Shown here piece by piece: positions 8,873-13,937 of a stretch of DNA of 60,715 bases. This DNA is from Girardia tigrina (lineage: Eukaryota), in contig MQRK01231964.1 in the NCBI GenBank assembly GCA_001938485.1, forward strand, positions 1-60,715, read 5' to 3'. A program made the position numbers and the translations under genes. Under the pieces are notes generated by a model. The model was not told the DNA's origin, ran no database searches, and worked only from the letters and a program-made list of their open reading frames with translations. Numbering within the stretch: the first letter of the stretch is position 1; the number at the start of each line of letters is the position of its first letter.

Positions 8873-10848
8873 TTAAATAATCATAATACAATTTTGCGTT
8901 GATTTAAATATGCTATAATTTTCTCCGATAATATGAAAAAATGTGATTTTAAAATGCTGATCTAACATGGATTACATCGATTTCTATATTAGACAGAAAA
9001 TACGATGGAACAATTTAAATCGCCATTTCATTTGGCGCTAATTTTACAATATCTTCTGATTATATTGAACAGTTCTGGAATATTATATCTGAATCTAAAG
9101 TTTATTCTTCGTAAATTAGAAGTTACTTAAGAAGCAACATATCACTCTTTGAAAATTGCAAAAGAAAATTATAGATTTATCATATTAAATCAAGTTCTTA
9201 TTACTGATTCAGATTCAACCGGTATGCATCTTTTTTCCGAATAAAGTATAAGCTGCAGCAATGACCAATATCATTTTCAATATCATACGATGCTCTTAAT
9301 GGAGTCGTTTATGGGGGTAGTAAAAGAAAATAGATTTATCACGAACCTTTGGTTAATGCTAGTGATCCAATTGTCTATATCTGAGACGAATATCTCGAAA
9401 CTATTCAAAACTCAAACAGAACAATGATCTAGGTATAAATTTTACTCTGAGAGTCTTTCTGTTCTCCCTACATGTTATGACCGGGTGCATTTTCATGATT
9501 TATTTCAGTCTTATTTCAGAGTTGTTATTACTTTTATCGTTATTGTTTGTTATCGGTTGATTCAATGTTTGCCAATTATGATTTCTATTTATTTCTTGTA
9601 TATTCTTGTATTGTAGGTTAAAAGCGATAATTTTGATCTTCTTTTGTGTCATTTTTATAATGTATTTCTTCAATACATCAATTGTTTTTTGTATTTTGAA
9701 AGGTTTGAAAATACTTACTTAAGTAATATCTATTGTTACTATACAAATCTTATGTTTTATTGTTTAAAGTTGCTATAAATTGAAATGAATAATCATGACT
9801 TTAAAGTCGTTTAAATTTACGAAATGAAGCTGGACCATACCTTTGGTGCAAACATTTACAAACTTAAAAATTAAGAAAAGATTAATTAGATTTGAATTTA
9901 AAACTATGTTTAAAACCTATTTGCACTTAATTTTTTTTCATTATAAAGGTTCGGAATTAACTCACAATGCGTCGATATTCATACTTTTAATCAACCACAT
10001 TTTATCTCATTATTTTTACCAATTAACATTCTCTGAGTATTTACCTATTGTGAATGTATAAACAATATCTATGGAACGATTAGTAACCCACCGGCATAAT
10101 TGCAATCTGGTTTATCGATGAAAATGACCGCTCAAAAAATGTGACTTGTCTTTAGGTGAATTTTAAATTGCGTATTGTAGGATTAACACAAATTCAATAC
10201 CTCTCATTAGAAGGATTTCGTATTTATTTTGTGAAGTAAAACCAATTAATGTCATTTAATAATATAATTTTAATAATGGAATCCCTTTTTTGTTATTTTC
10301 CCGTTATAGTATACAGCTTGAAGTACCTACCTCATTTCCTCAGTTCAAATAAATAAGAGCCTCGAATTTTCAAGAATATTTTTGGAGAAAGACAACATTA
10401 CCCTCTCCTTTAATTCCTATAAAAAATAATGTAATGTTAATATTTTGTATTATTTTTTATACCTAATAATTTTTGTAACTTTGATGAACATTTTAAATGT
10501 TGAAAGCTTTACGTAGCACTTCCATTGACCATAAGGCTATTTGAAATGTCATGTTGATATGAACTTTTCAATTATTATTTAATGTTACATAAAGGTTTTA
10601 TTAACTTTGTGAATAATGACTGATTCCTATTGAGTTTCAGAAATTTATTTACCATTATTTTTCGATTAGATCAGAACTTATCAAATCTTATAATTATTCT
10701 TCGTACCACTAAGATCACTTTCTTTAAATCTTTCAGTGTGTTTGTATTATCAATCTTTGTAGATTATTATTGAATTTACACAAGACTAGTACTTCATTAT
10801 ATCATATATTGCATGTTCATATGTTCGATACCATAAATACCTTGGCTA

Positions 10849-13463
10849 CAGTCTTCCCCCGAATATAGTACGCGCGCACTTTATTCGAATAGAACACGCA
10901 TGCGTATTTTATTCGAATAGAACGCGCGCGTACTATATTCGATTTGTACTGTGTAAATATAATTTCAAATGCACATTGTACGTGAAGTAAACTTTTCAAA
11001 CTATTCTTTCTTAAATTATAATTCACAGTCTTTGTTAGGAATTTATATATATATAAATTTTTTGAGTTGACTGGTTTCTTCAAAGTTTTTATGATANNNN
11101 NNNNNNNNNNNNNNNNNNNNNNNNNNNNNNNNNNNNNNNNNNNNNNNNNNNNNNNNNNNNNNNNNNNNNNNNNNNNNNNNNNNNNNNNNAATTTGAACAG
11201 CTATAAAATGAATATCGAATCAATAATTTCAAGTAGAAAGAATTATACCATCAAGCAAAAGCTTGATATCTTAAATGAAATAAAAACAGGTGAGCCTGGA
11301 AAAAGTTGCAGTGCTATTGCTAAATTACATGGAATTAACGAATCGGTGTTGCGCGGTTGGAAGAATAAAAAGGACAGTTTTCTTGAAGCGGTAAGTAATC
11401 TAAATACTTGTACTCGTAAGAGCAGGAGATTAGCTGGTGGTGGAAGGCAGCTTGAATATGCAGAAATAGAAAATAAAGTTCTGCAATGGGTTTTGTTACA
11501 GAATGAGAAGGGAATCCGAGTAAAGGAAAAATATATTCAATTGAAAGCCCTTTCAGTTCGAAATGAGATTATAGCTCACAACGATAATGAGGAGTTGAAA
11601 AAATTTCAAGCATCACTCGGTTGGGTGGAACGTTTCAAGAAGCGAAACAATTTGATTTCACGACGTTTTACCACTCCGAAGAAGATTCCAGATAATGTAG
11701 ACGAAATTTGTAGAAGCTTCATTCAGAATTTTCACCACATTATTGCAAAACTGAATGTAAAGGCAGAAAATATTATTAATTTTGATCAAGTACAAGATAC
11801 TTCGAGTGTGAGCTCAAAACTACGATAACCACAAAAGGGACAAGAGAAGTTTTTTACGTAAATCGTCAACATCACACAAACGTTTGACTTTTACATACGC
11901 AATCACTGGTGCTGGAAAAGTTTTAAAACCCCATCTGCTTTTTTCCGGACTTGTTAATAAACCAAATGTAGTTAAGCAATTTTTAGTTGACGTAAATCGC
12001 ACAGGTATGTGGAACGAAACAATTTTAATAAATTTCATTGCTGATGCGATTATGACGAGAAGACAATCAGCTTTTGGTAGAGAACCTGTTCTCGTTTTGT
12101 GTGATTNTTATGGCACACATGTAAAGTTTGTTGAATTGGAAAAAGAGAAAAAGAAATATGCTAAACATAACATTCATTTCATGCTAATACCACCGAATAT
12201 GACCGGATTGCTGCAGCCTGAAGATGTGTCACATAATAGAAGTTTCCAGCAAAATTATTCTACAAATTATGATAAATATCTTGCGGATGCCTTAGAAGAT
12301 GATAATCCCAATTTGTGTACTAAGGCTGGAAATATCAAATCACCTAATTATTCTTTGGTTTCCAAGTGGATTCTAGAATGGATAGACTCCTTGTCTCATG
12401 AAACTGTACAGAAAGCTTTTAAAGTTTGTGGGCTGGNNNNNNNNNNNNNNNNNNNNNNNNNNNNNNNNNNNNNNNNNNNNNNNNNNNNNNNNNNNNNNNN
12501 NNNNNNNNNNNNNNNNNNNNNNNNNNNNNNNNNNNNNNNNNNNNNNNNNNNNNNNNNNNNNNNNNNNNNNNNNNNNNNNNNNNNNNNNNNNNCTGGCCTG
12601 TGAATAACCGTACGAGTTTTTTTCATTGTATTTGGAAGGCGATTAATGAAACAACGAAAGATTTCGAAAGTTGGCTTGCTGAATTTACAAGCAAAGTCTT
12701 AAAATTCATTGATGAAGATGCTAATTGTAAGCAATTGCTTGATGCTTCTGAAAAAACCGTTTTGCAAAATGGCGAATCTACTGGAACAAATTTGGAAATT
12801 TTTGCTGTTTCTATGTTAAATCAATGGAAAATTAAAGTTACCACCTTAGATGATGAAGCATGTGAAGTATCAAGTTTCATTTATGAAGTTGTTTCACCAG
12901 AAAAAACTATTCACATTGTTAAGCACAATGAGTATTACGGATTAGAATTATAAAATTAATTTATAATTTCTTATTTTTTATTATTATTTTTTACAAANNN
13001 NNNNNNNNNNNNNNNNNNNNNNNNNNNNNNNNNNNNNNNNNNNNNNNGAAAAAACTATTCACATTGTTAAGCACAATGAGTATTACGGATTAGAATTATA
13101 AAATTAATTTATAATTTCTTATTTTTTATTATTATTTTTTACAAATAAATTATAATTCTTTAATTTAATTTTTTTTATATATTACAGAATGAAATTAAGC
13201 TATGAAATAAAGCAATGTAATGTACAATTTTTGTTGATTTTTACTTATGTAGATATTTCAGAAAGACTTATATTATATTTAAAGGGTAATTTAAAAAAAA
13301 CTATAATGTTTTAAATTTTAAATATTTTCTAGACACTCGAATATAATACGCGCGTTATATTTGAGTGCGCATCTTATTTGAAAAAAACTATAATATTCCA
13401 AATTTTGGATATTTTCTAGAAACTCGAATATAATGCGCGCGTATTATATTCGGGGGAGGACTG
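10849..13463 (+). mobile_element. pogo-family DNA transposon, near full length
   Basis: TA TSD on both sides and TIRs CAGTCTTCCCCCGAATATA..CGCGCGCA / TGCGCGCG..TATATTCGGGGGAGGACTG, with subterminal repeats. Confidence 0.92.
11208..12953 (+). pseudogene. pogo transposase (HTH + CENP-B HTH + DDE_1) with a C-terminal OTU-like extension; one frameshift near 11791 and an N gap
   Basis: RKNYTIKQKL, FQASLGWVERFKKRNNL, NFDQV(P), LCDxYGTH, LLQPEDV, KAFKVCG. The open frame at 12594-12953 lies inside the TIRs. Confidence 0.85.
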
Positions 13464-13937
13464 TAGGCAAGTCGGAAGTACCTATGCATCTTATCTTTGG
13501 TATATCATTTCATAAAACAATATATTAACACGTTTTTTACAAATATCAGAGGGCAGTATGTAACCATTAAGGTGTGGTATCATGGTACATAGCAAAGACG
13601 TAATGTTCCCCCCTCATTGTATTTTTATAACAAAAATATCGTAAATTATTCGTATTTTTCTCCTTGTAACTTTAATAATTGATAAACATTATGCGAATCA
13701 AAATTAATCCCTGTTTTATTTTTTATAATTTATATTTCTTAAACTGGATTAGTGTTACTTTTTGCAAACAATATATTTTATGACAAGTTGCTTTATTATT
13801 ATTTATATTTTTAGGTTATGAAAGAACCATAAATACGCTCTCTATGTCTATAAAAATTATTTATTATCTGTGCATTGTTAACAAAAACATAAGAATTTCT
13901 TACAGTAATTGTTACGTGATCTCTACTTATTGTATTA

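What the first reader, a model, noticed from the sequence alone, without database searches (positions are those of the whole stretch)
12594..12953. pogo transposon carrying an OTU-fold-like (pseudo-deubiquitinase) module inside its TIRs
Seen in sequence: after the DDE domain and a gap there is a stop-free 119-aa frame ending about 500 bp before the right TIR. It has three OTU-like blocks in the right order and spacing: NNRTSFFHCIWKAI (cf. GDGNCLFRAV), GESTGTNLEIFAVSMLNQWKIKV (cf. WGG.LEI.ALS.L...I.V) and TIHIVKHNEYYGL (cf. I.L.Y...HY..L). The nucleophile Cys appears to be Ser and the catalytic His appears to be Tyr. Established: OTU domains are known cargo of some Helitron and Ginger elements; I do not know of them as a standard part of pogo transposases. 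Inference: a transposase fused to a catalytically dead ubiquitin-binding module could aid target choice or evasion of degradation. The transposase also shows an atypical DD39D spacing by my count.
Basis: partly seen in the sequence, partly recalled or inferred. Interest (0 to 1): 0.78.

Follow-up and report, generated by a model that had tools for sequence, protein, structure and literature searches.

The report
Pogo transposase with dead OTU domain
The 119-residue frame is the C-terminal domain of a pogo-type "cut-and-paste" transposase; it has the fold of an OTU deubiquitinase but lacks the catalytic cysteine and histidine, a combination I found in no paper on pogo elements.

Summary
Window 10849-13463 is a young but broken copy of a pogo element, with 40-nt inverted ends, TA duplication, CENP-B/Tc5 HTH domains and DDE_1.

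The frame 12594-12950 gets no Pfam or PDB sequence hit. An exhaustive profile search found 35 relatives, and every one with N-terminal context sits at the C-end of a pogo-type transposase.

The catalytic Cys position is Ser or Thr in 26 of 28 relatives and never Cys. The His position is Tyr or Phe. So this is an ancient pseudo-enzyme, not recent cargo.

In sister copies the DDE domain and the module share one frame, 52 codons apart. At least four pogo families in this genome carry the module.

DD39D is counted correctly but is not atypical for pogo (published range DD29-59D). Ubiquitin binding remains untested. A separate DDE_1 ORF in the same genome carries a canonical OTU with Cys and His intact.

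The parts
10847..10848 (.). Left TA target-site duplication
   Evidence: Read. Homology among 30 or more copies starts at 10845-10846.
10849..10888 (+). Left terminal inverted repeat (begins CAGTC)
   Evidence: pair I1: 48-nt arms, 90% complementary.
10860..10941 (.). Subterminal GC-rich palindromic repeats, probably transposase binding sites
   Evidence: families D2 and I2. The same unit recurs at 13337-13365 and 13424-13452.
11208..11825 (+). N-terminal DNA-binding region: CENP-B_N (about 11232-11387) and HTH_Tnp_Tc5 (about 11457-11663). The first catalytic D is at 11784-11786. The frame ends at the stop at 11826-11828.
   Evidence: Pfam: HTH_Tnp_Tc5 E 2.9e-13, CENP-B_N E 6.2e-7. ORF table.
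11795..11883 (+). Broken stretch. The reading frame changes twice between the first D and the rest of the DDE domain, so this copy is dead.
   Evidence: Frames read. The HTH is in frame 0 and the DDE in frame 1. By eye, the middle piece reads in the third frame.
11884..12435 (+). DDE_1 catalytic domain. Second D at 12103-12105, third D at 12223-12225 (DD39D). An n sits at 12107.
   Evidence: Pfam DDE_1 E 4.9e-9; spacing computed.
12437..12592 (.). Run of 156 N. Going by sister copies, it covers the linker and the first roughly 10 residues of the module. It was not filled.
   Evidence: Sister copies have 156 nt (52 codons) between DDE end and module start, in frame. Here the distance is 158 nt and the frames differ.
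12594..12953 (+). Catalytically dead OTU-fold domain (119 aa plus stop). S8 (12615-12617) sits at the Cys site. Y114 and Y115 (12933-12938) sit at the His site.
12998..13047 (.). Second N-run, flanked by an exact 98-nt duplicate (12900-12997 = 13048-13145). This is an assembly artefact.
   Evidence: family D1.
13424..13463 (-). Right terminal inverted repeat (ends GACTG)
   Evidence: pair I1. Homology among 30 or more copies ends at 13466.
13464..13465 (.). Right TA target-site duplication
   Evidence: Read.

Best explanation
Window 10849-13463 is a recently amplified but now broken copy of a pogo-superfamily DNA transposon.

Its transposase, intact in the ancestral element, is a single polypeptide. 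It has two N-terminal HTH domains, a DDE_1 (DD39D) catalytic core, a linker of about 50 residues, and a C-terminal domain of about 130 residues with the OTU deubiquitinase fold.

That domain has lost the catalytic triad. The nucleophile Cys is Ser, the general-base His is Tyr or Phe, and no acidic third residue is conserved. It therefore cannot work as a cysteine protease.

The dead state is shared by every relative found, including four separate pogo families in this genome. The domain was therefore kept by selection for a non-catalytic role.

Shown: the fold, the fusion, the missing triad and the deep conservation.

Inferred: it serves as a binding module. The most likely ligand is ubiquitin or a ubiquitin-like modifier held in the old S1 site. 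This would tie the transposase to ubiquitin-marked chromatin or repair factors, or shield it from turnover. I put about 0.4 on this ligand. The conserved Ser may simply cap the first helix.
For: Fold:
- AF2 with the 39-sequence alignment gives pLDDT 94.4 and pTM 0.87; all five models are at 92.7 or above.
- Foldseek's top hits are nairovirus vOTUs, E 5.5e-5, probability 1.00, TM 0.71.
- Even the poor first model (pLDDT 59) ranked OTUs first.

Sequence level:
- hhalign of the module profile against canonical OTUs from the same genome gives P 4.5e-5 and places S8 on the catalytic Cys.
- 17 of the 30 nearest ESM-Atlas clusters are PF02338 OTU.

Fusion:
- In sister copies, DDE and module share a frame, 156 nt apart.
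- Open frames reach 360-501 aa.
- P0009 is a 577-aa protein with HTH, DDE and module.

Dead triad and conservation: see the column counts.

Depth:
- 35 relatives at 21-41% identity to the window module; every one that has N-terminal sequence before the module is pogo-type there.
- Families A to D in this genome.
- Among six family-A copies, pooled pN/pS is 0.29 (small numbers).
Against: - No Pfam OTU hit in any of the 39 members, and no HMMER hit to any PDB OTU. Homology therefore rests on predicted structure plus one modest profile-profile score.
- The model is a prediction, and I could not inspect its coordinates. The His-site mapping is good only to within one residue.
- There is no evidence at all for ubiquitin binding. 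Some OTU pseudo-enzymes are not known to bind ubiquitin (my recollection).
- The window copy is out of frame and its N-terminal strand is masked.
- Transcription evidence is a single 191-nt metatranscriptome contig, which could be DNA carry-over.
Confidence: 0.78

Rival explanations
1. The domain has the OTU fold but no longer has anything to do with ubiquitin. It would act as a dimerisation or regulatory domain of the transposase (synaptic-complex assembly, autoinhibition) or dock some other host protein.
For: - The triad is entirely gone.
- CENP-B, a pogo-derived gene, acquired a dimerisation domain in its C-terminal region (PMC7386202).
- Nothing here shows ubiquitin binding.
Against: - The motifs that line the ubiquitin-tail cleft in canonical OTUs are the best-conserved parts: the Cys-loop helix, the G...E.xA.S helix and the aromatic His-loop.
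- Active OTU or Ulp1 domains recur at the C-termini of other transposases (PMC2836005), which points to a ubiquitin-pathway link.
Confidence: 0.35
2. The domain is still an enzyme: a Ser-nucleophile hydrolase (isopeptidase or esterase) that uses a different base.
For: Ser or Thr at the nucleophile position is nearly invariant (26 of 28), which is more than a dead site strictly needs. E68 and D86 are highly conserved.
Against: - No His at or near the His-loop in 33 of 34 relatives.
- By my motif reading, E68 lies in the helix motif that canonical OTUs also conserve, where I take it to be structural.
- Ser is a favoured helix N-cap, which explains its conservation.
- I know of no OTU with a Ser nucleophile (own knowledge).
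Confidence: 0.07
3. The OTU likeness is spurious, or the frame is a captured host fragment unrelated to the transposase.
For: No Pfam or PDB sequence hit. The frame in the window is separated from the DDE by a masked gap and a frame change.
Against: - In-frame continuity in sister copies.
- The module was found only on pogo-type transposases, across 35 database relatives and four genomic families.
Confidence: 0.03

Closest known systems
Ginger1 DNA transposon transposases with a C-terminal OTU domain (Bao, Kapitonov and Jurka 2010, PMC2836005)
   Same: A DDE-type cut-and-paste transposase with an OTU domain fused at its C-terminus, inside TIRs, in aquatic invertebrates.
   Different: Ginger1 uses a Gypsy-integrase-like DDE core, and its OTU is recognised by Pfam PF02338. 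Here the core is pogo DDE_1, the OTU is invisible to Pfam, and its triad is gone.
OTU domains of Helitron/Helentron proteins
   Same: OTU carried by a DNA transposon protein.
   Different: These are rolling-circle elements with Rep/helicase proteins. Their OTU is aligned with yeast Otu1 and Ginger OTUs in PMC2836005.
OTUD1, OTUD2, OTUD3, yeast Otu1/Otu2 and nairovirus vOTU (minimal OTU deubiquitinases)
   Different: Only 9-16% identity. These have the Cys/His(/Asp) triad; the module has Ser and Tyr instead.
FAM105A/OTULINL, an OTU-family pseudo-deubiquitinase (PDB 6drm)
   Different: A host membrane-associated protein of the OTULIN subfamily, with a larger domain and no transposase link.
Canonical pogo/Tigger transposases and CENP-B
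   Same: CENP-B_N plus HTH_Tnp_Tc5 plus DDE_1, DDxD triad, TA duplication. CENP-B also gained an extra domain in its C-terminal region.
   Different: The two large pogo surveys list no OTU domain (zero mentions of OTU). CENP-B's added domain is a dimerisation domain (Pfam CENP-B_dimeris), not OTU.
DDE_1 plus canonical OTU ORF in the same genome (L041:67-2370 = G000:C13971:905-3208)
   Same: A DDE_1 (DD35D by my count) transposase-like protein with a C-terminal OTU.
   Different: - Its OTU passes Pfam (E 2e-14) and keeps Cys and His.
- It lies about 250 residues after the DDE domain.
- Its DDE is only 19% identical to P0009's.
- Only 3-4 copies were found.

Membership tests
OTU deubiquitinase superfamily (Pfam PF02338; MEROPS C85 and relatives) | The OTU alpha/beta fold: helical lobe plus C-terminal beta-sheet, with the first helix carrying the nucleophile | tested here: met
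OTU deubiquitinase superfamily (Pfam PF02338; MEROPS C85 and relatives) | Sequence match to the family profile above the curated cut-off | tested here: not met
   No PF02338 hit in the window peptide or in any of 39 aligned members. No HMMER hit to PDB OTUs. Only an hhalign P of 4.5e-5.
OTU deubiquitinase superfamily (Pfam PF02338; MEROPS C85 and relatives) | Catalytic Cys at the N-terminus of the first helix | tested here: not met
   S8 aligns to the Cys. Across relatives the column is S23, T3, L1, N1 and never C.
OTU deubiquitinase superfamily (Pfam PF02338; MEROPS C85 and relatives) | Catalytic His in the last beta-hairpin | tested here: not met
   Y114 or Y115 lies at the His position. The columns are F/Y/I and F18/Y12/H1.
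OTU deubiquitinase superfamily (Pfam PF02338; MEROPS C85 and relatives) | Third triad residue (Asp or Asn), either three residues before the Cys or two after the His | tested here: not met
   Position 5 is variable (E8, I4, N3 and others). Position 116 is G13, A9.
OTU deubiquitinase superfamily (Pfam PF02338; MEROPS C85 and relatives) | Binds or cleaves ubiquitin or a ubiquitin-like protein | not testable with these tools
   This needs biochemistry. The complex prediction gave no verdict, so it counts neither way.
pogo superfamily of IS630-Tc1-mariner transposons | DDE_1-type catalytic domain with a DDxD triad | tested here: met
   PF03184 E 4.9e-9. D at 11784, 12103 and 12223. DD39D, inside the published range DD29-59D.
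pogo superfamily of IS630-Tc1-mariner transposons | N-terminal CENP-B_N and HTH_Tnp_Tc5 DNA-binding domains | tested here: met
   E 6.2e-7 and 2.9e-13.
pogo superfamily of IS630-Tc1-mariner transposons | Terminal inverted repeats and TA target-site duplication | tested here: met
   pair I1. TA at 10847-8 and 13464-5. Copy boundaries confirmed.
pogo superfamily of IS630-Tc1-mariner transposons | Placement in a named pogo family (Tigger, pogoR, Lemi, Passer, Mover, Fot) by phylogeny | not tested

The most novel reading that the evidence does not exclude
A whole clade of pogo transposons has turned a deubiquitinase into a ubiquitin (or ubiquitin-like) reader built into the transposase. The dead OTU domain would dock the enzyme on ubiquitin-marked chromatin or replication/repair factors, steering where or when the element integrates. 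Alternatively it would act as a decoy against ubiquitin-dependent host restriction. The canonical, Cys/His-bearing OTU on another DDE_1 protein in the same genome would represent the enzymatic ancestor state.
Probability: 0.3. Interest if true: 0.75.

Novelty: new variant of a known kind. Interest (0 to 1): 0.55.

Why it matters
OTU and Ulp1 proteases fused to transposases (Ginger1, Helitron, Mutator) have long hinted that DNA transposons use the ubiquitin/SUMO system, but the purpose is unknown.

This case adds pogo, described as perhaps the most widely distributed DNA-transposon group (PMC7386202), to that list. It does so in a form where catalysis has been lost but the fold has been kept across deep divergence.

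That separates binding from cleavage. If the domain is needed for transposition, the requirement must be recognition, not deubiquitination.

It also shows that Pfam-based surveys of pogo miss a conserved domain that only structure prediction reveals. The module HMM could be used to re-annotate pogo elements and possibly domesticated genes.

Tried and rejected
- Pfam on the single peptide and on all 39 aligned members: no OTU hit.
- HMMER profiles A1 and A3 against PDB sequences: nothing relevant.
- Word-index protein searches with the 119-aa peptide, with the P0009 module region and with the canonical-OTU region of L041: no relatives.
- First AF2 run with only genomic families A and B: pLDDT 59, too weak to use alone.
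- Complex prediction of the module with this genome's own ubiquitin unit (L064:1495-1722): no verdict, median score 0.22, controls not run. This is no evidence either way.
It was redone by reference.
- Rejected: the DD39D spacing as a special feature.
- Rejected: recent capture of a host OTU gene. There is no nucleotide or HMMER-level similarity to the canonical OTUs of this genome, and the module is shared by four old pogo families.
- The masked stretch 12437-12592 was not filled. Frame continuity was judged only from coordinates and frames of sister copies.
- A printout unintentionally showed residues of another copy upstream of its module. These were neither used nor reported.

Full report
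**1. What is at the coordinates**

Window 12594-12950 reads as 119 codons without a stop, ending at TAA 12951-12953. It lies inside a 2.6-kb element bounded by 48-nt inverted arms (10841-10888 and 13424-13471, 90% complementary).

The element proper starts CAGTC at 10849 and ends GACTG at 13463, each next to TA. Homology among at least 30 other copies begins at 10845-10846 and ends at 13466. The shared sequence is therefore the element plus TA plus one base, which suggests a CTAG-like target preference.

Upstream of the frame are:
- CENP-B_N and HTH_Tnp_Tc5 domains (11208-11825; E 6.2e-7 and 2.9e-13);
- a DDE_1 domain (11884-12435; E 4.9e-9).

This is a pogo-superfamily transposon.

The copy is dead:
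- The HTH frame stops at 11826.
- The frame changes twice before 11884.
- There is an n at 12107.
- The module sits in a different frame from the DDE domain across the masked run 12437-12592.

A second N-run (12998-13047) is flanked by an exact 98-nt duplicate. This is an assembly artefact that inflates the distance to the right end.

**2. Is the module part of the transposase?**

I did not fill the masked stretch. Instead I mapped the three protein pieces of the window onto 27 sister loci and compared only coordinates and frames.

In L002, L005, L008, L021, L025 and L014/L015 the DDE end and the module start are in the same frame, exactly 156 nt (52 codons) apart. The stop-free frames containing the module reach 360, 374, 406 and 501 aa. 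In the database, P0009 is a 577-aa protein with HTH, DDE_1 and the module ending at its last residue.

So the ancestral gene is one ORF and the module is its C-terminal domain. In the window the distance is 158 nt. Either this copy carries a 2-nt indel in the masked part or the N-run length is not exact. I cannot tell which.

**3. What the module is**

Sequence methods give nothing:
- No Pfam family for the peptide or for any of 39 aligned members.
- No HMMER hit to PDB sequences.
- No word-index hits.

The exhaustive profile search of 1.84 billion representatives found 35 proteins (best E 1.2e-27). Wherever they have N-terminal sequence, it is pogo-type: eight match DDE_1 and three match HTH_Tnp_Tc5.

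With this 39-sequence alignment (A2), AlphaFold2 gives pLDDT 94.4 and pTM 0.87, with all five models at 92.7 or above. The model has four to five helices followed by a four-stranded sheet.

Fold searches return OTU domains only:
- Foldseek agrees: nairovirus vOTUs, E 5.5e-5, probability 1.00, TM 0.71.

Two other lines agree with the fold result:
- hhalign of the module profile against canonical OTU domains taken from this same genome gives P 4.5e-5.
- 17 of the 30 nearest ESM-Atlas clusters are PF02338 OTU.

I conclude that the domain is a divergent member of the OTU fold superfamily.

**4. The active site**

The hhalign alignment puts T7-S8 on the N-C of the canonical DGNC motif. The chain ranges are consistent with this: model residue 1 pairs with vOTU 33, Otu1 113 and OTUD1 313. 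By my recollection of the published numbering, the catalytic cysteines are 40, 120 and 320, so S8 falls on each.

At the C-terminus, forced alignments place the catalytic His on Y114 (template L057) or Y115 (L041, L056). Both are Tyr.

Across the relatives:
- Position 8 is S23, T3, L1, N1 and never Cys.
- Position 114 is F11, Y9, I4 and others.
- Position 115 is F18, Y12, H1.
- Position 5 (three residues before the nucleophile) and position 116 (two residues after the His site on the Y114 register) show no conserved acid.
- The structural OTU motifs are kept: G60 29/35, E68 33/36, A71 23/36, S73 21/36 plus A12, W78 27/36, D86 28/36.

The domain is therefore a pseudo-enzyme, and that state is ancestral to the whole clade found.

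**5. Depth and selection**

A search of the genome with the module profile finds 111 matches. They fall into at least four pogo families:
- A, the window's family: 92-98% protein identity. Six full-length copies differ at 4-9 of 357 nt.
- B: L029 to L040, about 30% identity to A.
- C: L067 to L073 and L076.
- D: L074 and L075.

All four have Ser at the nucleophile site and sit behind a pogo DDE domain. Database relatives are 21-41% identical to the window module. Conservation of fold-defining positions over that distance is the main evidence for purifying selection.

Within family A, six full-length copies show 18 variable-site events (codon positions 2, 7 and 9) and a pooled pN/pS of 0.29. 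This is suggestive only.

**6. The DD39D remark**

The count is right. However, relatives have DD35D (six proteins) and DD37D (P0009). Gao et al. 2020 report DD29-36D for Tigger, DD29-42D for Lemi and DD29-59D for pogoR (PMC7386202). The spacing is not unusual.

**7. Comparison with what is known**

Ginger1 transposases carry C-terminal OTU or Ulp1 domains, and some animal Helitrons carry OTU (PMC2836005). The authors proposed a role for the ubiquitin pathway in transposition.

The two large pogo surveys never mention OTU. Full-text searches combining pogo, Tigger or mariner with OTU, ovarian tumor or deubiquitinase found no such report.

Within this genome I also found a 767-aa ORF (L041:67-2370) with DDE_1 (E 4.8e-22; DD35D by my count) and a canonical Pfam OTU (E 2e-14). 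It keeps the DGNC cysteine and the H-Y histidine. It is present in 3-4 copies. Its DDE is only 19% identical to P0009's.

So a DDE_1-OTU association also exists in a canonical form with the catalytic residues present. The window's family is the catalytically dead form.

**8. How it probably works**

Shown: the fold, the fusion, the loss of the triad and the long-term retention.

Inferred: the domain acts by binding, not cleaving. The best-conserved parts are those that line the ubiquitin-tail cleft in canonical OTUs. Other transposases repeatedly recruit ubiquitin or SUMO proteases. I therefore favour ubiquitin or a ubiquitin-like protein as the ligand (about 0.4).

A ubiquitin-independent docking or oligomerisation role is nearly as likely (about 0.35). 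A Ser-based hydrolase is unlikely (about 0.07) because no base is conserved.

The complex prediction with the genome's own ubiquitin gave no verdict and counts for nothing.

**9. Expression and host**

Near-identical sequence occurs in runs labelled with four coded organisms. It also occurs in pond, aquatic, biofilm and leaf-litter metagenomes.

One metatranscriptome contig of 191 nt covers 12785-12962 with one mismatch, and a 375-nt contig of a possible RNA run covers 12594-12906. This is weak evidence of transcription. I did not identify the host species.

**10. Limits**

- Coordinates of the model were not available, so the active-site mapping is indirect.
- The masked stretch was left unread. 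A printout unintentionally showed another copy's residues upstream of its module, and they were not used.

**Verdict**

This is a new variant of a known kind (transposase-OTU fusions). It is notable for occurring in pogo, for being invisible to Pfam and for being catalytically dead.

Noticed in passing
L041:67-2370 (= G000:C13971:905-3208); also C55063, C96396, C60563: A 767-aa ORF combines a DDE_1 transposase domain (DD35D by my count) with a canonical Pfam OTU domain that keeps its Cys and His. Only 3-4 copies were found. It may be a low-copy pogo-like element or a domesticated gene. No TIRs were found on the short contig.
   Followed up: partly
G000 genome-wide; example L078:2342-4720 (-): Ubiquitin (PF00240) gives 3445 first-look candidates, many inside long ORFs. 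The example ORF (792 aa) joins PRMT_C, a ubiquitin unit and DUF1759, which I recall as a BEL/Pao Gag-like domain. This suggests retrotransposons carrying host gene pieces, including ubiquitin.
   Followed up: partly
L032, L033, L034, L035, L038, L039 (family B): Several family-B copies share one internal deletion. It joins the DDE motif around the second D directly to the middle of the OTU-like module. This is an amplified non-autonomous derivative.
   Followed up: no
window 12900-12997 and 13048-13145: An exact 98-nt duplicate lies on both sides of a 50-N run. This is almost certainly an assembly or gap artefact, not biology.
   Followed up: yes
window 10860-10941 and 13337-13452: GC-rich palindromic subterminal units (about 28 nt, core CGCGCG) occur three times at the left end and twice at the right end. 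They are likely transposase binding sites.
   Followed up: no
L014/L015/L023/L026 (G000:C226761:13295-14561): Two module copies lie about 890 nt apart on one contig, each preceded by a DDE fragment. This is a local tandem duplication within a family-A copy.
   Followed up: no
P0010 (KAL3680025.1): One module-bearing pogo protein is annotated in a liverwort (Riccia sorocarpa) assembly on a 51-Mb contig. The clade is therefore not confined to this host; alternatively this reflects transfer or contamination.
   Followed up: no
window 12594-12998, in public runs: Near-identical sequence (0.85 of sampled words) is held by runs under four coded organism labels. It is also in pond, aquatic and biofilm metagenomes. 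Partial matches (0.23-0.36 of words) occur in leaf-litter metatranscriptomes. This fits a common freshwater or soil animal, or recent horizontal spread.
   Followed up: partly
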